A DNA stretch of 64,000 nt from NCBI GenBank assembly GCA_002269645.1, contig NIVC01000212.1:186001-250000 (forward strand). The letters are read 5' to 3'. Positions 5,916 to 16,397 of this stretch are shown in pieces. Position 1 is the first letter of the stretch; each line of letters opens with the position of its first letter. This DNA is from Macrostomum lignano (taxonomy: Eukaryota). Position numbers and translations under genes: made by a program. The notes below the pieces were generated by a model. The model saw nothing but the letters and a program-made list of their open reading frames with translations. It made no database searches and was not told the origin of the DNA.

Positions 5916-6527
5916 ATGCTTGAATGCTGTCTTTGGATGTTTTGTTTTTAGAGGGAATGTCTGTTGTTTTTTATGAAGGCTTTATTTCGCTGTCTATTTG
6001 TTATTTGTAAAGAGCAAGGATTCTATCCAGATGTCCCAATCGGGAGGGCGAAGATTGCTAGTTAGTTACAGTTACTAAATTCACTCTGTCTGGAGACCTC
6101 TGTCAGAGACCTGTGTCGGGAGGTCTATGTCCAGACACCCTGTCTAGAAACCCAATCCAGAGACATTCAGGTGGTATCGTACCACATTGAAGTTTAGACA
6201 AATTAGCGCTTTAAATTTATCAATTCTATCAAAAAACCTTACTTGCAGGTGAGCTAAATAATGCGAGTAACGATTAAATAGGAGCATCTGATTGGATACA
6301 GTAAGGTTAGGTTGGATTGAGTTAGGGTCAGGTTCTGATTAGGGTTAGGTTTAGGGTTAAGTCTATGGTTAAATCAGGGTTTGGGTCAGTCAGCAGTTGG
6401 TGCCGTTTTTAGATAAAGTCAGTAAAATAAGAGTTGTTTGAAACATTGCAATTGTTTATATTTTGCATTTAAACAGATGTTTAACGACAGTTTCTGTTCA
6501 AGCATCCAATTCAGCAGCTTTCATCAG

Positions 6528-9500
6528 TCAGGCAGTTTCGCCAGAGTAGTTCTTCGGAACCGGAACCAGATCGAATATCTCCATTGCGTCCCTACCGCCG
6601 CACTTTTCACCATACAAATAGTTGTAACATTGAACGTTGCATATCAAATTGAGAACATTTCGGGACCTGATTTCATCTCCACAGAAGCACCGTCTACCAT
6701 CAAACAGGCCAAAGTATTTCCAAGTTTTTTCCATCAAGCAGTGAGTGGCGCAGACTCGTTGGCTCATGTATTTGAAGTCTTCGTCAACTTCATATTTTAA
6801 AGCAAAATCTCTATGATCTCCATTCAGGTACCAAAGGTAGCATCCTTTCGAAGGCGCTTGAAAAAAATGGAACGAAAGTTAAGTAAAAGAATGCGAATGA
6901 TGAGGCAGAGCCAGCAAGACTTACCGGGAATCATGGGCTGCATATCGATGGGTGCACCTGAAATTTACAGGTTATGATGGCGTTCTTGAGCTCAATAGTA
7001 TACTATATTCACAAGCTGAAATTTTCAGATTGTAAAAAGTTGTTGTTTTATTGCCCCGAAAGACAATCTTGTTTTGAAGACAATCAATAAAAGTTCATAC
7101 ACTTTTCCGTACACTTTGAGCTTGAAAAAGCAACGCGTGAATAGCCTGCATAATGTGGCAAACTATTTTTGTTTGTATAATTGCAAACAATCTCAACTCA
7201 ATTTAGGAGGCTGCTCAGTTATTGCACACAATGACAGGTCGGTTTTGCAGACTGATTAGTTATTGCACACAATCACAGTTTGGTTTTGCAGACTGATTAG
7301 TTATTGCACACAATCACAGTTTGGTTTTGCAGACTGATTAGTTATTGCACACAATCACAGTTTGGTTTTGCAGACTGATTAGTTATTGCACACAATCACA
7401 GGTCGGTTTTGCAGACTGCTCAATATTAGCACACGATAACAGGTCGATTTTGATGCACTTAAATTTCTCACCTTCAGGTTCGTAGACATCCAGAGCGCTT
7501 TGGCCGGAGTAGATTTTCGGTACCGGCTTCAGATCGAATACTTCTATTGCGCCCCTACCGCCGCATTTTTTATGATACAAATAGTTGAAACATGAAGCGT
7601 TGCAGTAATACTTGGGAATAATTTGTGATTGGATTTTATTTCCACAGAGGCACCGTCTACCATCAGCCAGGCCAAAGTATTTCCATCTTGTTTCCATCAA
7701 GCAGTGAGAGGCGCAGACTCGTTGGCTCATGTATTTGAAGTCTTCTTTGATCTCTCTAGTAAGAACGGAATAACCATTCCCCCAATGGTAGCATCCCTTC
7801 GAAGGCGCTTAAATGAAAAATGGACGAAAGTTAGGCAAAAAAAGGAATGCGAATGATGAAGCAGAGCTAGCAAGACTTACCGGGAATCATTGGCTGCATA
7901 TCGATGGGTGCACCTGAAATTCATGAGGTTTTTATGGCGTTTTATATGACAACTATACCATTAGCTCTTAATCTTTACAAGCTCTTCACAAACTGTTGTA
8001 AGCTTTGAAAAAGTTTAATATTTTGTCAATAAAAGTTCACTAGCTGGCTACAGAACATTTGAGCTTGACAAATAAAAGAATCTTGAATAGTCTTCATAAT
8101 GTGACAGACTCATCATTCCTAAGACTGATTAGTTATTGCACACAATGACAGGTCGGTTTTGTAGACTGATTACTTATTGCACACATTCACAGGTCGGTTT
8201 TTCAGACTGATTAGTTATTGCACACAATTACAGGTCGGTTTTGCAGACTGATTAGTTATTGCACACAATGACAGGTCAGTTTTGCAGACTGATTAGTTAT
8301 TGCACACAATGACAGGTCGGTTTTGCAGACTGATTAGTTATTGCACACATTCACAGGTCGGTTTTGCAGACTGATTAGTTATTGCACACAAGCACAGGTC
8401 GGTTTTGCAGACTGATTAGTTATTGCACACATTCACAGGTCAGTTTTGCAGACTGATTAGTTATTGCACACAATCACAGGTCGGTTTTGCAGACTGATTA
8501 GTTATTGCACACAATCACAGGTCGGTTTTGCAGACTGATTAGTTATTGCACACAATCACAGGTCGGTTTTGCAGACTGCTCAATATTAGCACACGATAAC
8601 AGGTCGATTCTGATGCACTTAAATTTCTCACCTTCAGGTTCGTAGACATCCAGAGCGCTTTGGCCGGAGTAGATTTTCGGTACCGGCTTCAGATCGAATA
8701 CTTCTATTGCGCCCCTACCGCCGCACTTTTTATGATACAAATAGTTGAAACATGAAGCTTTGCAGTCCAACTTGGGAACAATTGTTTTGCTATGGATTTT
8801 ATTTCCACAGAGGCACAGTCTACCATCAGCCAGGCCAAAGTATTTAGATCCTAATTCCATCAAGCAGTGAGAGGCGCAGACTCGTTGGCTCATGTATTTG
8901 AAGTCTTCTTTGATCTCTCTACTAAGAACGGAATAATGATTCCCCCAATGGTAGCATCCCTTCGAAGGCGCTTAAATGAAAAATGGACGAAAGTTAGGCA
9001 AAAAAAGGAATGCGAATGATGAAGCAGAGCTAGCAAGACTTACCGGGAATCATTGGCTGCATATCGATGGGTGCACCTGAAATTCATGAGGTTTTTATGG
9101 CGTTTTATATGACAACTATACCATTAGCTCTTAGTCTTACAAGCTCTTCACAAACTGTTGTAAGCTTTGAAAAAGTTCAATATTTTGTCAATAAAAGTTC
9201 ACTAGCTGGCTACAGAACATTTGAGTTTGACAAATAAAAGAATCTTGAATAGTCTTCATAATGTGACAGACTCATCATTCCTAAGACTGATTAGTTATTG
9301 CACACAATGACAGGTCGGCTTTGTAGACTGATTAGTTATTGCACACATTCACAGGTCAGTTTTGCAGACTGATTAGTTATTGCACACAATCACAGGTCGG
9401 TTTTGCAGACTGATTAGTTATTGCACACAATGACAGGTCGGTTTTGTAGACTGATTAGTTATTGCACACAATCACAGGTCGGTTTTGCAGACTGATTAGT

Positions 9501-12500
9501 TATTGCACACAATGACAGGTCGGTTTTGCAGACTGATTAGTTATTGCACACAATCACAGGTCGGTTTTGCAGACTGATTAGTTATTGCACACAATGACAG
9601 GTCGGTTTTGTAGACTGATTAGTTATTGCACACAATCACAGGTCGGTTTTGCAGACTTATTAGTTATTGCACACAATGACAGGTCGGTTTTGCAGACTGA
9701 TTAGTTATTGCACACAATCACAGGTCGGTTTTGCAGACTGATTAGTTATTGCACACAATCACAGGTCGGTTTTGCAGACTGATTAGTTATTGCACACAAT
9801 CACAGGTCGGTTTTGCAGACTGATTAGTTATTGCACACAATGACAGGTCGGTTTTGTAGACTGATTAGTTATTGCACACAATGACAGGTCGGTTTTGCAG
9901 ACTGATTAGTTATTGCACACAATGACAGGTCGGTTTTGCAGACTGATTAGTTATTGCACACAATCACAGGTCGGTTTTGCAGACTGATTAGTTATTGCAC
10001 ACAATGACAGGTCGGTTTTGTAGACTGATTAGTTATTGCACACAATGACAGGTCGGTTTTGCAGACTGATTAGTTATTGCACACAATCACAGGTCGGTTT
10101 TGCAGACTGATTAGTTATTGCACACAATCACAGTTTGGTTTTGCAGACTGATTAGTTATTGCACACAATCACAGGTCGGTTTTGCAGACTGATTAGTTAT
10201 TGCACACAATCACAGGTCGGTTTTGCAGACTGATTAGTTATTGCACACAATGACAGGTCGGTTTTGCAGACTGATTAGTTATTGCACACAATCACAGGTC
10301 GGTTTTGCAGACTGATTAGTTATTGCACACAATGACAGGTCGGTTTTGCAGACTGATTAGTTATTGCACACAATCACAGGTCGGTTTTGCAGACTGATTA
10401 GTTATTGCACACAATCACAGGTCGGTTTTGCAGACTGATTAGTTATTGCACACAATCACAGGTCGGTTTTGCAGACTGATTAGTTATTGCACACAATGAC
10501 AGGTCGGTTTTGTAGACTGATTAGTTATTGCACACAATGACAGGTCGGTTTTGCAGACTGATTAGTTATTGCACACAATGACAGGTCGGTTTTGCAGACT
10601 GATTAGTTATTGCACACAATCACAGGTCGGTTTTGCAGACTGATTAGTTATTGCACACAATGACAGGTCGGTTTTGTAGACTGATTAGTTATTGCACACA
10701 ATGACAGGTCGGTTTTGCAGACTGATTAGTTATTGCACACAATCACAGGTCGGTTTTGCAGACTGATTAGTTATTGCACACAATCACAGGTCGGTTTTGC
10801 AGACTTATTAGTTATTGCACACATTCACAGGTCGGTTTTGCAGACTGATTAGTTATTGCACACAATCACAGTTTGGTTTTGCAGACTGATTAGTTATTGC
10901 ACACAATCACAGGTCGGTTTTGCAGACTGATTAGTTATTGCACACAATCACAGGTCGGTTTTGCAGACTGATTAGTTATTGCACACAATCACAGTTTGGT
11001 TTTGCAGACTGATTAGTTATTGCACACAATCACAGGTCGGTTTTGCAGACTGATTAGTTATTGCACACAATGACAGGTCGGTTCTGCAGACTGATTAGTT
11101 ATTGCACACAATCACAGGTCGGTTTTGCAGACTGATTAGTTATTGCACACAATGACAGGTCGGTTTTGTAGACTGATTAGTTATTGCACACAATGACAGG
11201 TCGGTTTTGCAGACTGATTAGTTATTGCACACAATGACAGGTCGGTTTTGCAGACTGATTAGTTATTGCACACAATCACAGGTCGGTTTTGCAGACTGAT
11301 TAGTTATTGCACACAATCACAGGTCGGTTTTGCAGACTGATTAGTTATTGCACACAATCACAGGTCGGTTTTGCAGACTGATTAGTTATTGCACACAATG
11401 ACAGGTCGGTTTTGTAGACTGATTAGTTATTGCACACAATGACAGGTCGGTTTTGCAGACTGATTAGTTATTGCACACAATGACAGGTCGGTTTTGCAGA
11501 CTGATTAGTTATTGCACACAATCACAGGTCGGTTTTGCAGACTGATTAGTTATTGCACACAATGACAGGTCGGTTTTGTAGACTGATTAGTTATTGCACA
11601 CAATGACAGGTCGGTTTTGCAGACTGATTAGTTATTGCACACAATCACAGGTCGGTTTTGCAGACTGATTAGTTATTGCACACAATCACAGTTTGGTTTT
11701 GCAGACTGATTAGTTATTGCACACAATCACAGGTCGGTTTTGCAGACTGATTAGTTATTGCACACAATCACAGGTCGGTTTTGCAGACTGATTAGTTATT
11801 GCACACAATGACAGGTCGGTTTTGCAGACTGATTAGTTATTGCACACAATCACAGGTCGGTTTTGCAGACTGATTAGTTATTGCACACAATGACAGGTCG
11901 GTTTTGCAGACTGATTAGTTATTGCACACAATCACAGGTCGGTTTTGCAGACTGATTAGTTATTGCACACAATCACAGGTCGGTTTTGCAGACTGATTAG
12001 TTATTGCACACAATCACAGGTCGGTTTTGCAGACTGATTAGTTATTGCACACAATGACAGGTCGGTTTTGTAGACTGATTAGTTATTGCACACAATGACA
12101 GGTCGGTTTTGCAGACTGATTAGTTATTGCACACAATGACAGGTCGGTTTTGCAGACTGATTAGTTATTGCACACAATCACAGGTCGGTTTTGCAGACTG
12201 ATTAGTTATTGCACACAATGACAGGTCGGTTTTGTAGACTGATTAGTTATTGCACACAATGACAGGTCGGTTTTGCAGACTGATTAGTTATTGCACACAA
12301 TCACAGGTCGGTTTTGCAGACTGATTAGTTATTGCACACAATCACAGGTCGGTTTTGCAGACTTATTAGTTATTGCACACATTCACAGGTCGGTTTTGCA
12401 GACTGATTAGTTATTGCACACAATCACAGTTTGGTTTTGCAGACTGATTAGTTATTGCACACAATCACAGGTCGGTTTTGCAGACTGATTAGTTATTGCA

Positions 12501-15500
12501 CACAATCACAGGTCGGTTTTGCAGACTGATTAGTTATTGCACACAATCACAGTTTGGTTTTGCAGACTGATTAGTTATTGCACACAATCACAGGTCGGTT
12601 TTGCAGACTGATTAGTTATTGCACACAATGACAGGTCGGTTCTGCAGACTGATTAGTTATTGCACACAATCACAGGTCGGTTTTGCAGACTGATTAGTTA
12701 TTGCACACAATGACAGGTCGGTTTTGTAGACTGATTAGTTATTGCACACAATGACAGGTCGGTTTTGCAGACTGATTAGTTATTGCACACAATCACAGTT
12801 TGGTTTTGCAGACTGATTAGTTATTGCACACAATCACAGGTCGGTTTTGCAGACTGATTAGTTATTGCACACAATCACAGGTCGGTTTTGCAGACTGATT
12901 AGTTATTGCACACAATCACAGTTTGGTTTTGCAGACTGATTAGTTATTGCACACAATCACAGGTCGGTTTTGCAGACTGATTAGTTATTGCACACAATCA
13001 CAGGTCGGTTTTGCAGACTGATTAGTTATTGCACACAATCACAGGTCAGTTTTGCAGACTGATTAGTTATTGCACACAATCACAGGTCGGTTTTGCAGAC
13101 TGCTCAATATTAGCACACGATAAAAGGTCGATTCTGATGCACTTAAATTTCTCACCTTCAGGTTCGTAGACATCCAGAGCGCTTTGGCCGGAGTGGTTTT
13201 TCGGAACCGGCACCAGATCGAATACTTCCATGGCAGAACTACCGCCGCACTTTTCAACGTCAGAAAAATTGAAACATGGAACGTTGCAGTCCAACTTGGG
13301 AACAATTATTTTGCTATGGATTTTATTTCCACAGAAGCACAGTCTACCATCAGCCAGGCCAAAGTATTTAGATCCTAATTCCATCAAGCAGTGAGAGGCG
13401 CAGACTCGTTGGCTCATGTATTTGAAGTCTTCTTTGATCTCTCTATCAAGAACGTAATAATGATTCCCCCAAACGTAGCATCCCTTTGAAGGCGCTTAAA
13501 TGAAAAATGGACGAAAGTTAGGCAAAAAAAGGAATGCGAATGATGAAGCAGAGCTAGCAAGACTTACCGGGAATCATTGGCTGCATATCGATGGGTGCAC
13601 CTGAAATTCATGAGGTTTTTATGGCGTTTTATATGACAACTATACCATTAGCTCTTAGTCTTACAAGCTCTTCACAAACTGTTGTAAGCTTTGAAAAAGT
13701 TCAATATTTTGTCAATAAAAGTTCACTAGCTGGCTACAGAACATTTGAGCTTGACAAATAAAAGAATCTTGAATAGTCTTCATAATGTGACAGACTCATC
13801 ATTCCTAAGACTGATTAGTTATTGCACACAATGACAGGTCGGTTTTGTAGACTGATTAGTTATTGCACACAATCACAGGTCAGTTTTGCAGACTGATTAG
13901 TTATTGCACACAATCACAGTTTGGTTTTACAGACTGATTAGTTATTGCACACAATCACAGGTCGGTTTTGCAGACTGCTCAATATTAGCACACGATAAAA
14001 GGTCGATTCTGATGCACTTAAATTTCTCACCTTCAGGTTCGTAGACATCCAGAGCGCTTTGGCCGGAGTGGTTTTTCGGAACCGGCACCAGATCGAATAC
14101 TTCCATGGCAGAACTACCGCCGCACTTTTCAACGTCAGAAAAATTGAAACATGGAACGTTGCAGTCCAACTTGGGAACAATTGTTTTGCTATCGATTTGA
14201 TCTCCACAGAAGCACCGTCGACCATCAGCCAGGCCAAAGTATTTCTTTTTGCGCATCAAGCAGTGAGTAGCGCAGACTCCTTGGCTCATGCGGTCGAAGT
14301 CTTCTTTAACCTCCATGTCGAGAAGGGCGTCCTTCGGGCTCCATTGGTGGCATCCCTTCGAAGGCGCTTGAATTAAAAGCAGACAGTGACAGGACAAAGG
14401 TTAAGCTAAGAATGTGAATGTTGCAGCAGAGCCAGCAAGACTTACCGGGAATCATGGGCTCCAGATTTATGGGTGAACCTGAAATTCACAGGTTGTGATA
14501 GTGTTTTATAAGCTTATGACTTCACAGGTCGGTTTTGCAGACTGCTCAGAATCATTCGTAACACATGTATAGTCCGCGACGAGAAAAGGGCGGGATCAAG
14601 AGCCAGTTAGAGGGCAGCGAGAGAGGGAAAGCGAAAACAGAGGGAGAGAAAACAGAGGGAGAGAAAACAGAGGGAGAGAAAACAGAGGGAGAGAAAGAGA
14701 AAACAGAGGGAGAGAAAACAGAGGGAGAGAAAACAGAAAAGGGCGTGAAAACAGAGGGAGAGAAAACAGAGGGAGAGAAAACAGAGGGAGAGAAAACAGA
14801 GGGAGAGAAAACAGAGGGAGAGAAAACAGAAGAGGGCGAGAAAACAGAGGGCGAGAAAACAGAGGGAGAGAAAACAGAGGGAGAGAAAACAGAGGGAGAG
14901 AAAGAGAAAACAGAGGGAGAGAAAACAGAGGGAGAGAAAGAGAAAACAGAGGGAGAGAAAGAGAAAACAGAGGGAGAGAAAACAGAGGGAGAGAAAACAG
15001 AGGGAGAGAAAACAGAGGGAGAGAAAACAGAAGAGGGCGAGAAAACAGAGGGAGAGAAAACAGAGGGAGAGAAAACAGAGGGAGAGAAAACAGAAGAGGG
15101 CGAGAAAACAGAGGGAGAGAAAACAGAAGAGGGCGAGAAAACAGAGGGAGAGAAAACAGAGGGAGAGAAAACAGAGGGAGAGAAAGAGAAAACAGAGGGA
15201 GAGAAAACAGAGGGAGAGAAAACAGAGGGAGAGAAAACAGAGGGAGAGAAAGAGAAAACAGAGGGAGAGAAAGAGAAAACAGAGGGAGAGAAAACAGAGG
15301 GAGAGAAAACAGAGGGAGAGAAAACAGAGGGAGAGAAAGAGAAAACAGAGGGAGAGAAAGAGAAAACAGAGGGAGAGAAAGAGAAAACAGAGGGAGAGAA
15401 AACAGAGGGAGAGAAAACAGAGGGCGAGAAAACAGAGGGATGCCAGTGCCAATAGCACACAATCACAGGTCACTTTTGCAGACTGCTCAGCATTAGCACA

Positions 15501-15769
15501 CGTAATAGTTCGCGACGAGAGGAAGGCGAGAGCAATGAGCCAATCAGAGGGCAGCGAGGGAAAGAGAGAAAATAACAAGACTGAACAAGACAGACGGGAG
15601 AGAAAACAGAGCAAGCTGAGACAAGTGAAGGTGAATTAAAAATATGCCTGAGAAGTCGCGACATCACACAATCACAGGTCAATTCTGAGACACCAAATCT
15701 CTTACCTTTGGCTTCGTAGAATTCCTGAGCAGTCACAAGGATTATCAGAGTCAGTGCTGAGCACAGCAT
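6528..15769 (-). CDS. Secreted protein with five tandem WSC domains, 11 exons, ~635 aa
   Basis: Exons 15769-15706 (signal peptide MLCSALTLIILVTAQ...), 14478-14446, 14366-14031, 13600-13568, 13494-13156, 9076-9044, 8970-8632, 7913-7881, 7807-7472, 6957-6925, 6856-6528; all GT-AG, all phase 1; total 1908 nt = 636 codons; each domain has the 8-Cys WSC pattern GC..C..C..YFGL.DG..C.CG..C..C..CGG. Confidence 0.85.
9284..13101. repeat. 41-bp intronic satellite, ~93 units; same family at 7217-7417 (~5), 8122-8577 (~11) and 13808-13976 (~4)
   Basis: Unit GATTAGTTATTGCACACAATCACAGGTCGGTTTTGCAGACT; no spacers. Confidence 0.97.
14630..15440. repeat. 15-bp purine-rich minisatellite (GAGGGAGAGAAAACA) in intron 1 of the WSC gene
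   Basis: Direct inspection. Confidence 0.95.
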
Positions 15770-16397
15770 GATGCAGGATTTATTTTGCTATATCGAACTT
15801 CTTTATTAAGTATTGAATGGGTCCTTGGTTTGTCAAAAGTTGAGCTGGGAGCCGCAGTCGAGCCTCGCGTCTTTTTATGCAGCAGAAGTGTTTAGCCATA
15901 GACGCTGCAGTTCGTCCCTGCATGTACAGTGCATGCTTGCTTTATAGTCTCTGACCCTTCCTCTGAGTCTGAGTGCAAGCAGTGATAAAATAAAAGTACA
16001 AGTGACTGATGGTTCGACAATTAGCGCGAAATGTTAAACTCTGCAGCTGTTGAGCTTTTACTTGAGCCTAATTCTCACAGGTTATTCGTCCACACCCTGC
16101 GTGAATATAGGCGGGTTACAGAACCTGTATAAGCTGCTGCTGCATGTGACGCTCAACTCTATTAGAGTTAGCAGCTAGACTCTATCAATCTATCCAAGAG
16201 CTGCACCAAACTGCCGGTGTTCTACTGAAAGTAGACAGTCAAACTCAGAAATAATAAAACTAAACACTTTTTCTATGTCTAAGATGATTGGTTGTTCAAA
16301 ATATGTCTTACAATGTCTTTAAAATGGCCTGGGTGTCGGTTTTGAGCTGTTTGTCTGACAAGAAAAACTGGATCTGTTGACAAAAATCACCTTGAAA

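What the first reader, a model, noticed from the sequence alone, without database searches (positions are those of the whole stretch)
6528..15769. Five-WSC protein still shows its origin by head-to-tail fusion of a one-domain gene at a 5-nt microhomology
Seen: WSC exons 1-4 end in GCT CTG GAT GTC TAC GAA CCT GAA G|GTGAGAAATTTAAGTGCATCAGAATCGACC. This matches the end of the signal-peptide exon and the start of its intron, GCT CAG GAA TTC TAC GAA GCC AAA G|GTAAGAGATTTGGTGTCTCAGAATTGACC (19 of 25 exonic nt identical, intron starts also alignable). The last WSC exon ends GAA ACT GCC TGA and the leader reads GTG ACT GCT CAG, sharing ACTGC exactly where the stop would be. Inference: a tandem duplication joined the WSC 3' end to the leader 3' end in frame, removing stop and signal peptide. 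That made a repeatable [33-nt linker exon + WSC exon + satellite intron] module, now in five copies.
Basis: partly seen in the sequence, partly recalled or inferred. Interest (0 to 1): 0.8.

Follow-up and report, generated by a model that had tools for sequence, protein, structure and literature searches.

The report
Five-WSC gene born by internal duplication
A flatworm (Macrostomum lignano) gene for a secreted protein with five WSC domains still carries the junction scar of the small head-to-tail duplication that turned a one-domain gene into a repeatable module: a clean example of an already known way that repeat proteins grow.

Summary
On the minus strand, 15769-6528, an 11-exon model gives a 635-aa protein with five WSC domains. 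It is identical to NCBI PAA87879.1 of Macrostomum lignano, whose gene models were built from RNA-seq. The last 25 nt of the leader exon plus the start of its intron are homologous to the ends of WSC exons 1-4 (19/25 nt; score 34 against about 4±2 in controls). Left of the sequence ACTGC the internal exons match the terminal exon (51/63). Right of it they match the leader (16/22). The 3'UTR shows no homology to the internal tails. One head-to-tail junction explains both boundaries. A one-domain paralogue with the predicted architecture exists in the same genome. It has the same leader, a satellite-free intron, a 33-nt linker exon, and a WSC exon ending GAAACTGCCTGA. The two ACTGC sites lie 689 bp apart. 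Other copies of the gene carry five or six modules. Three things stay unresolved: whether there was one step or two, whether the one-domain gene is ancestral or a secondary collapse, and the exact breakpoint, because the junction now reads AGCGC. This is a well-preserved case of gene elongation by internal tandem duplication, of moderate interest.

The parts
15706..15769 (-). Leader exon (64 nt, ATG at 15769): MLCSALTLIILVTA|QEFYEAKG. It is a hydrophobic signal peptide followed by a 25-nt tail (15730-15706), and ends in a phase-1 donor G|GTAAGA.
   Evidence: Identical to the N-terminus of PAA87879.1. Cleavage after VTA is an inference from the -3/-1 rule and was not computed.
15729..15733 (-). 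ACTGC in the leader exon (codons T13-A14): the inferred 5' breakpoint and microhomology site.
6532..6536 (-). ACTGC in the terminal WSC exon (GAA ACT GCC TGA): the inferred 3' breakpoint and microhomology site, directly before the stop codon at 6530-6528.
14479..15705 (-). Intron 1 (1227 nt). Its 5' and 3' ends are homologous to the inter-module introns. It contains a 15-nt TC-rich (GA-rich on the + strand) minisatellite of about 52 copies at 14633-15440, and partial copies of the 41-bp unit.
14031..14478 (-). Module 1: 33-nt linker exon 14478-14446, 79-nt intron, WSC exon 14366-14031 (336 nt). The chimeric junction AGCGC is at 14058-14054 and the leader-derived tail at 14055-14031.
13601..14030 (-). 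Inter-module intron 1-2 (430 nt): leader-type donor region followed by the 41-bp satellite, 4.1 copies (13808-13977).
13156..13600 (-). Module 2: linker exon 13600-13568, 73-nt intron, WSC exon 13494-13156 (339 nt). Junction at 13183-13179. The exon is a mosaic: its 5' half resembles module 3 and its 3' half is identical to module 1.
9077..13155 (-). Inter-module intron 2-3 (4079 nt) with the 41-bp satellite, 93 copies (9284-13102).
8632..9076 (-). Module 3: linker exon 9076-9044, 73-nt intron, WSC exon 8970-8632 (339 nt). Junction at 8659-8655.
7914..8631 (-). Inter-module intron 3-4 (718 nt) with the 41-bp satellite, 11.8 copies (8122-8606).
7472..7913 (-). Module 4: linker exon 7913-7881, 73-nt intron, WSC exon 7807-7472 (336 nt). 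Junction at 7499-7495.
6958..7471 (-). Inter-module intron 4-5 (514 nt) with the 41-bp satellite, 5.8 copies (7217-7452). From the last unit onward it is collinear with intron 1 of the one-domain paralogue.
6528..6957 (-). Module 5 (terminal): linker exon 6957-6925, 68-nt intron, WSC exon 6856-6528 ending ...NYSGETA*. It keeps the original, unfused 3' end and 3'UTR.
15770..16003 (-). 5'UTR and promoter region shared, together with the leader exon and the start of intron 1, at 87% identity with the one-domain paralogue. It includes a conserved TATAAAG at 15946-15940. Its function is inferred only.

Best explanation
**What it is.** This is gene BOX15_Mlig022635g1 of the flatworm Macrostomum lignano. 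It encodes a secreted 635-aa protein made of five WSC domains. WSC is an eight-cysteine module thought to bind carbohydrate.

**The ancestor.** The gene grew from a three-exon, one-domain gene with this layout:
- a 64-nt leader exon
- an intron
- a 33-nt linker exon
- a short intron
- a WSC exon ending in a stop codon

**The founding event.** A head-to-tail tandem duplication of about 0.7 kb had one breakpoint in the leader exon, just after the signal peptide. The other breakpoint was in the terminal exon, just before the stop codon. Both fell in a shared ACTGC and joined in frame.
- The upstream WSC exon lost its stop codon.
- It gained the last 23-25 nt of the leader exon together with that exon's phase-1 splice donor and intron.
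- This made a phase-symmetric (1-1) unit of [intron + linker exon + WSC exon with tail] that can be copied any number of times.

**Later growth.** Unequal crossing-over and gene conversion raised the number to five modules (six in one paralogous copy). The tails became homogenised and mosaic exons were produced. A 41-bp piece of the intron expanded into a satellite.

**What is shown and what is inferred.**
- Shown: the exon structure, the chimeric junction, the existence of the one-domain architecture, and the variation in copy number.
- Inferred: the repair mechanism (microhomology-mediated), the cleavage site, the carbohydrate-binding function, and any benefit of multivalency.
For: - **Gene model.** The 11-exon model gives a clean ORF with five WSC hits (170 bits). 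It is identical to PAA87879.1. Models of that assembly come from RNA-seq by StringTie/TACO (PMC5730564).
- **Leader tail against module tail.** 19/25 nt plus an alignable intron start, z = 16-21 against pseudo-donor controls, 0 of 20,000 shuffles.
- **Three-way chimera.** Internal exon against terminal exon is 51/63 left of the junction. Internal exon against leader is 16/22 to the right. The 3'UTR is not homologous to the internal tail.
- **Independent mapping.** With the one-domain paralogue as reference, terminal-type homology ends at window 14058/13183/8659/7499 and leader-type homology starts at 14055.
- **One-domain paralogue S** (L003 10001-10734). It has the same promoter and leader, a 243-nt intron without a satellite, a 33-nt linker exon, and a WSC exon ending GGCGAAACTGCCTGA with the same 3'UTR. 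Its two ACTGC sites are 689 bp apart and in the same codon phase.
- **Microhomology.** A run of 5 nt or more is expected at 0.7% of random junctions.
- **Consistent ages.** The tail has diverged 24%. Module 5 differs from modules 1-4 by 22-26% in nt, with dS 0.33-0.51.
- **Phase.** All module introns are phase 1, and the exons are 33 nt plus 336 or 339 nt.
- **Module number.** It differs among loci: 5, 5 and 6. Satellite copy number also differs.
- **Older ends.** The leader exon with tail and donor is recognisable in the distant paralogue P0173 (z 7.4; tail alone z 3.5).
Against: - The junction in all internal exons reads AGCGC, not ACTGC. Two of the five bases must have changed afterwards, so the exact breakpoint is not directly visible.
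- All four internal tails are identical. They count as one observation, homogenised or recently copied, not four.
- Transcript support is indirect: short-read, genome-guided assembly of a repetitive gene. No full-length cDNA was examined.
- The one-domain paralogue cannot be shown to predate the fusion. S falls outside the five modules in 56-77% of bootstraps and groups with module 5 in 41%. dS between S and module 5 (0.28) is no larger than dS between module 5 and modules 3/4 (0.33-0.37).
- No orthologue from another species was available to date or polarise the event.
Confidence: 0.8

Rival explanations
1. Two-step origin. The whole one-domain gene was first duplicated in tandem. A deletion between the two copies, again at ACTGC, then removed the stop codon, 3'UTR, intergenic DNA, promoter and signal-peptide coding part of the downstream copy and fused the genes.
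For: The final junction would be identical to what is seen. Family members do lie close together on the same strand. For example, a 131-aa WSC gene sits 1.3 kb upstream of the one-domain gene in L003 and L006.
Against: It needs two events where one is enough. No remnant of intergenic or promoter sequence is found between the modules. Small tandem duplications of a few hundred bp have clearly occurred elsewhere in the family: P0173 has a one-exon, two-domain fusion.
Confidence: 0.15
2. Reverse polarity. The ancestor already had several WSC modules. The leader tail was copied from an internal exon end, and the terminal exon end arose separately by truncation. One-domain genes would then be secondary collapses.
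For: The tree and dS values do not exclude that the one-domain gene S is sister to module 5. Recombination between the homologous leader-tail/intron and module-tail/intron could cleanly delete the internal modules.
Against: Two independent events would have to break within the same 2-5 nt and in the same register. The 3'UTR shows no trace of a former tail or intron. A homologous leader exon with tail and donor exists in a paralogue with saturated dS (P0173) whose WSC exons lack such a tail. The chimeric tail ALDVYEPE occurs only in this gene cluster.
Confidence: 0.03
3. The leader/module resemblance is chance, or a by-product of shared splice-donor and codon constraints.
For: Both sequences flank a G|GTRAGA donor, which by itself gives a few identities.
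Against: 117 other GGTRAG sites in the window score 4.4±1.8 (maximum 7) against an observed 34. None of 20,000 shuffles that keep the donor reached the observed score or 19/25 identity. Homology continues about 40 nt into the intron and reappears at the 3' ends of the introns.
Confidence: 0.01
4. The five-module array is an assembly artefact of a repetitive region.
For: The satellites and near-identical modules 3/4 are hard to assemble. Satellite lengths differ between near-identical copies (93 against 27 units). Two copies carry a 1-nt deletion in a homopolymer.
Against: Three separate contigs show the same order of distinguishable modules, which are 74-94% identical to each other. An RNA-derived model spans all of them. 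The junction argument needs only one internal module.
Confidence: 0.01

Closest known systems
Domain-repeat expansion by tandem duplication of phase-symmetric exons (general principle; e.g. Schad et al. 2013, PMC3632108; Piccolo zinc-finger amplification, PMC3484663)
   Same: Tandem copies of an exon set that encodes one domain. The introns are homologous, phases are symmetric (1-1), and copy number varies between paralogues.
   Different: In the usual case the breakpoints lie in introns flanking an exon that is already internal. Here the domain exon was the terminal exon. It became internal only because the breakpoints lay in the first and last coding exons, so the leader exon's 3' end and donor were grafted onto it.
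Gene elongation by internal duplication with non-homologous breakpoints, e.g. the human haptoglobin Hp2 allele (from my own knowledge; not checked here)
   Same: A small intragenic tandem duplication created by illegitimate recombination lengthens the protein in frame.
   Different: As I recall it, the Hp2 breakpoints are intronic. Here they are exonic, remove a stop codon, and coincide with the predicted start of the mature protein.
Head-to-tail polyprotein genes such as polyubiquitin or notothenioid antifreeze glycoprotein (from my own knowledge)
   Same: Several complete copies of a mature protein unit are concatenated behind a single signal or start.
   Different: The linkers here (SGQSALDVYEPEGAPIDMQPMIPAPSKGC) contain no dibasic or other evident processing sites, and introns separate the units. 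It is most likely one multidomain protein, not a precursor.
Paralogue BOX15_Mlig001653g2 (P0173) in the same genome
   Same: A second WSC gene of the family became two-domain by a small tandem duplication whose 3' breakpoint lies just before the stop codon.
   Different: Its 5' breakpoint is in the short intron. About 22 nt of former intron now code for the linker, and both domains share one exon. There is no reusable splice module and no further expansion.
WSC domain proteins (Pfam PF01822; Kremen1 WSC domain, PDB 5FWS/5FWW; fungal Wsc1 sensors)
   Same: Eight-cysteine WSC domain. Pfam gives 170 bits over five copies. The best solved relative is Kremen1 at E = 1e-5.
   Different: This is a small secreted protein made only of WSC units, from a lineage-specific M. 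lignano family with 1 to 6 domains. It has no transmembrane, kringle or CUB parts.

Membership tests
WSC domain (Pfam PF01822) | Profile match above Pfam's gathering score | tested here: met
   170 bits against a cut-off of 27.8, in five stretches
WSC domain (Pfam PF01822) | Eight conserved cysteines per domain | tested here: met
   Counted in the translation of each of the five modules (alignment)
WSC domain (Pfam PF01822) | Carbohydrate binding | not testable with these tools
   Needs a binding assay. Only sequence similarity to the Kremen1 WSC domain was found (E = 1e-5)
Gene elongation by internal tandem duplication | Head-to-tail repeated units that include homologous introns | tested here: met
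   Five units with homologous linker exons, short introns, WSC exons and flanking intron ends
Gene elongation by internal tandem duplication | A junction that is a chimera of the two ends of the duplicated segment | tested here: met
   Internal exon end = terminal-exon sequence followed by leader-exon sequence, with the switch inside 5 nt
Gene elongation by internal tandem duplication | Reading frame preserved (phase-symmetric unit) | tested here: met
   All module introns are phase 1. The exons are 33 nt plus 336 or 339 nt. ACTGC is in the same codon phase at both sites
Gene elongation by internal tandem duplication | An unduplicated relative with the predicted ancestral architecture | tested here: met
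   One-domain genes S (L003) and S2 (L006). Whether they predate the event is inconclusive
Microhomology-mediated rearrangement (replication slippage, template switching or MMEJ) | A few bases of identity at the breakpoints and no longer homology around them | tested here: met
   ACTGC is in register at both parental sites in W, S and S2. The flanks are 12/63 identical. P(5 nt or more) = 0.007 for random junctions
Microhomology-mediated rearrangement (replication slippage, template switching or MMEJ) | Microhomology retained once at the junction | tested here: inconclusive
   The junction now reads AGCGC (3 of 5 bases). The surrounding divergence of about 25% makes later change plausible
Polyprotein precursor | Protease processing sites between the units | tested here: not met
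   No dibasic or other recognisable sites in the 29-residue linkers (translation). Cleavage was not tested experimentally

The most novel reading that the evidence does not exclude
The gene belongs to a lineage-specific family of small secreted WSC proteins in Macrostomum. In this family, concatenation of whole mature proteins has arisen repeatedly by different routes:
- an exon-exon junction in this gene
- an intron-exon junction in P0173
- classical exon duplication in P0015

Two further observations fit this reading. The WSC cores evolve at dN/dS of about 1. A core can also be swapped as a sharply bounded cassette between paralogues (S against S2). Together these would point to selection for multivalent, rapidly diversifying glycan-binding proteins, for example in reproduction, adhesion or defence. 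The satellite-filled introns would promote changes in module number.
Probability: 0.15. Interest if true: 0.6.

Novelty: new member of a known kind. Interest (0 to 1): 0.4.

Why it matters
Most repeat proteins are too old for the first step of their growth to be seen. Here four things are still readable in one genome: both parental ends, the junction, a one-domain relative with the pre-duplication architecture, and later copy-number variants. This gives a concrete, testable example of how a terminal exon can be turned into a reusable internal exon by capturing the first exon's splice donor. It also shows how a signal-peptide gene can become a multivalent secreted protein. The value is as a didactic and comparative case. 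It does not reveal a new mechanism.

Tried and rejected
1. **Is the terminal exon a decayed internal exon?** I looked for homology between its 3'UTR or flank and the internal tail or intron. There was none (z -0.1 to 1.2).
2. **Does P0015 show the same chimera?** At protein level it looked as if it might (…PPETDEKRQGAK against leader …HEKKQGAK). The DNA shows ordinary exon-pair duplication with the shared residues in the linker exon, so I rejected it as a parallel.
3. **Rooting the WSC-exon tree to decide whether the one-domain gene is ancestral.** The result was unresolved: 56-77% against 41%. Core swapping between paralogues further undermines such trees.
4. **Orthologues in other species.** Both protein searches returned only M. 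lignano proteins as close relatives. The next hits are a fungal protein and a Diplonema protein.
5. **Literature on these genes.** There are no papers for the gene identifiers or for "WSC domain" together with Macrostomum.
6. **Other WSC genes in the window.** There are none.
7. **Structure prediction.** Not run. Pfam and PDB sequence matches were enough for domain identity.
Full report
**Observation**

The feature lies on the minus strand. I read the region and located the motifs. I then built an 11-exon model:
- a 64-nt leader exon, 15769-15706
- five repeats of [33-nt linker exon, 68-79-nt intron, 329-339-nt WSC exon]
- the stop codon at 6530-6528

All ten introns are GT-AG and phase 1. The CDS is 1908 nt and 635 aa. 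Pfam finds five WSC domains (170 bits against a cut-off of 27.8), each with eight cysteines. The nearest solved relative is the Kremen1 WSC domain (E = 1e-5).

The protein is identical to NCBI PAA87879.1, BOX15_Mlig022635g1 of Macrostomum lignano. Gene models of that assembly were derived from RNA-seq by StringTie/TACO plus a de novo transcriptome (PMC5730564). The AAG|GTGAGA donors therefore have indirect transcript support.

**Is the leader/module similarity real?**

Yes.
- The last 25 exonic nt are 19/25 identical, and the first 42 or so intronic nt align with one gap.
- The semi-global score over 67 nt is 34.
- Against 117 other GGTRAG sites in the window the leader scores 4.4±1.8 (maximum 7).
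- 20,000 shuffles that keep the donor give 4.0±1.9 (maximum 17). None reached 34 or 19/25.
- Homology between intron 1 and the inter-module introns also appears further in and at the 3' ends next to the linker exons.

**The junction**

I placed the terminal exon, an internal exon and the leader in one ungapped, codon-aligned register.
- Left of A(CT/GC)GC, the internal exon matches the terminal exon at 51/63 and the leader at 12/63.
- Right of it, the internal exon matches the leader at 16/22 and the 3'UTR at 8/22.
- Gapped tests find no homology between the 3'UTR or flank and the internal tail or intron (z about 0).

Both supposed parents read ACTGC in register and in the same codon phase (ACT GCx). 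In a gene of this kind only 0.7% of random junctions have 5 nt or more of microhomology. The product now reads AGCGC, so two of the five bases have changed. This fits the roughly 25% divergence of the flanks, but it means the exact breakpoint is inferred.

**One junction or two events?**

If the internal exon end is the chimera, one event explains both homology boundaries and leaves both parents where they are found: the leader at the 5' end and the unfused exon at the 3' end. The reverse polarity needs two independent events that break within the same few nucleotides.

Both parental ends also exist outside this gene.
- The distant paralogue P0173 (dS saturated) has a homologous leader exon with a post-signal tail and donor (z 7.4; tail alone z 3.5), while its WSC exons have no such tail.
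- The ...VPVPKNxSGxTA* end occurs in two one-domain genes.

**The predicted one-domain gene exists**

An exhaustive profile search with module 5 found P0012 (BOX15_Mlig018627g1). Its locus, L003 10001-10734, has these parts:
- the same TATA-containing promoter; the block from the 5' flank through the leader into intron 1 is 87% identical to the window
- a leader exon matching at 63/64 nt
- a 243-nt intron 1 without any satellite
- a 33-nt linker exon and a 71-nt intron
- a WSC exon ending GGCGAAACTGCCTGA, followed by the same 3'UTR as the terminal exon here

BLASTN of this locus against the window independently places the end of terminal-type homology at window 14058/13183/8659/7499 and the start of leader-type homology at 14055. 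The two ACTGC sites are 689 bp apart, so the founding event can be modelled as a 0.7-kb tandem duplication.

The ACTGC codons encode T-A of ...LVTA|QEF..., the likely signal-peptidase site by the -3/-1 rule. This is my inference and was not computed. If it holds, the modules are whole mature proteins joined end to end.

**Is that gene ancestral?**

This is unresolved.
- NJ trees place it outside the five modules in 77% of bootstraps, or 56-59% when the tail columns are removed. It groups with module 5 in 41%.
- dS values are all about 0.3-0.5.
- A secondary collapse by recombination between the homologous leader tail and a module tail is possible.

The origin argument does not depend on this point.

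**Later history**

Module 5 is 74-78% identical in nt to modules 1-4. Module 1 is 79-87% identical to modules 2-4, and modules 3 and 4 are 94% identical. Module 2 is a mosaic of module 1 (3' half) and module 3 (5' half). All four tails are identical, so they are homogenised or recently copied.

Two other contigs carry the gene:
- L002 has five modules.
- L001 has six modules; its modules 3 and 4 are identical apart from one missing G in module 3.
- Both have a G5-to-G4 deletion in module 3. This is either a frameshift or a homopolymer assembly error, and it explains their truncated annotations.

The 41-bp satellite has the following copy numbers in the four inter-module introns:

| Locus | Copies |
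|---|---|
| Window | 4.1, 93, 11.8, 5.8 |
| L002 | 4.1, 27, 15.8, about 6-8 |

L001 has five such introns. TRF gives 9.1 and 10.8 copies for the first and last, and one merged array of about 97 copies that spans the three 1128-nt introns between them.

The one-domain gene has a single copy of the unit (GACCTGTGATTATGTGCTATTACTGAGCAGTCTGCC) and is otherwise collinear with the inter-module introns. The satellite therefore arose after the founding duplication and was not part of the original module.

**Family context**

The closest relatives are all M. lignano proteins with one to six WSC domains. Two other multi-domain members were examined at DNA level.
- **P0173** became two-domain by an independent small duplication. 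Its 5' breakpoint lies in the short intron, so about 22 nt of former intron now code for the linker and both domains share one exon.
- **P0015** grew by ordinary duplication of an exon pair, with GC-AG introns.

The route seen in the window, capture of the leader donor, is thus one of several used in this family.

**Comparison and verdict**

This is gene elongation by internal tandem duplication, followed by expansion of phase-symmetric exons (compare PMC3632108). The less common detail is that both breakpoints are exonic and turn a terminal exon into a reusable internal one. It is not a polyprotein in the usual sense, because the linkers have no processing sites.

What remains open:
- one-step against two-step origin
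- the exact breakpoint
- the polarity of the one-domain paralogue
- the function of the protein

The case is a well-preserved example of a known process and not a new one. Interest 0.4.

Noticed in passing
L003 10419-10662 versus L006 about 5930-6170 (syntenic one-domain genes S and S2): The two copies are about 99% identical through the promoter, leader, intron 1, linker exon and short intron, and again through the last 70 or so coding nt and the 3'UTR. Across about 245 nt of the WSC core they are only about 50% identical. S2's core resembles a different paralogue group (O1/P0173-like). This is a sharply bounded cassette replacement or gene conversion.
   Followed up: partly
L005 9290-9350 (BOX15_Mlig001653g2, P0173): Two WSC domains lie in a single exon. 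The junction joins ...GTGCCGGAAACTCGG of a terminal-type exon to the last 22 or so nt of the short intron (ACCTCTGCCGTTTTTTCAG), which now encodes the linker TSAVFS. This is an independent stop-removing tandem duplication.
   Followed up: partly
L004 8050-10380 (BOX15_Mlig010030g1, P0015): A three-WSC gene whose WSC exons all end ACAG|GCAAGT, which look like GC-AG introns. The sequence after the last WSC exon is homologous to the inter-module introns, indicating ordinary exon-pair duplication.
   Followed up: partly
L001 about 10010 and L002 about 10010 (third WSC exon of each): Both other copies of the gene have GGGGG reduced to GGGG in CCATTGGGGGAATG. This shifts the frame and explains the truncated annotated proteins that start MLPLGN... 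It may be real pseudogenisation or a homopolymer assembly error.
   Followed up: partly
window 6528-14366 (WSC exons) and L003 10412-10734: dN/dS between modules and the one-domain paralogue is about 0.6-1.25 (2.1 for the youngest pair). The short introns are more conserved (80-89%) than the WSC exons (66-76%). The domains are evolving fast or under relaxed or diversifying selection.
   Followed up: partly
window 14633-15440: Intron 1 carries a 15-nt GA-rich (TC-rich on the gene strand) minisatellite of about 52 copies. It is flanked by duplicated blocks ending TCGTCGCGAAC / TCGTCGCGGAC and by partial copies of the 41-bp unit. It is present in all three multi-module loci and absent from the one-domain gene.
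   Followed up: no
window 1-64000: The window is packed with more than 30 different minisatellite or microsatellite arrays with periods of 4-57 nt (up to about 218 in higher-order rows), many of them inside introns. This agrees with the reported 15% of simple and tandem repeats in this genome (PMC5730564).
   Followed up: no
window about 35700-55900, + strand: ORF fragments match dynein heavy chain domains (DHC_N2, AAA_7, AAA_8, AAA lid, Dynein_C). A large dynein heavy chain gene with repeat-filled introns occupies much of the rest of the window.
   Followed up: no
window 6290-6370: About 160-240 nt beyond the gene's stop codon there are degenerate TTAGGG-like repeats (gttagggtcaggttctgattagggttaggtttagggtta).
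   Followed up: no
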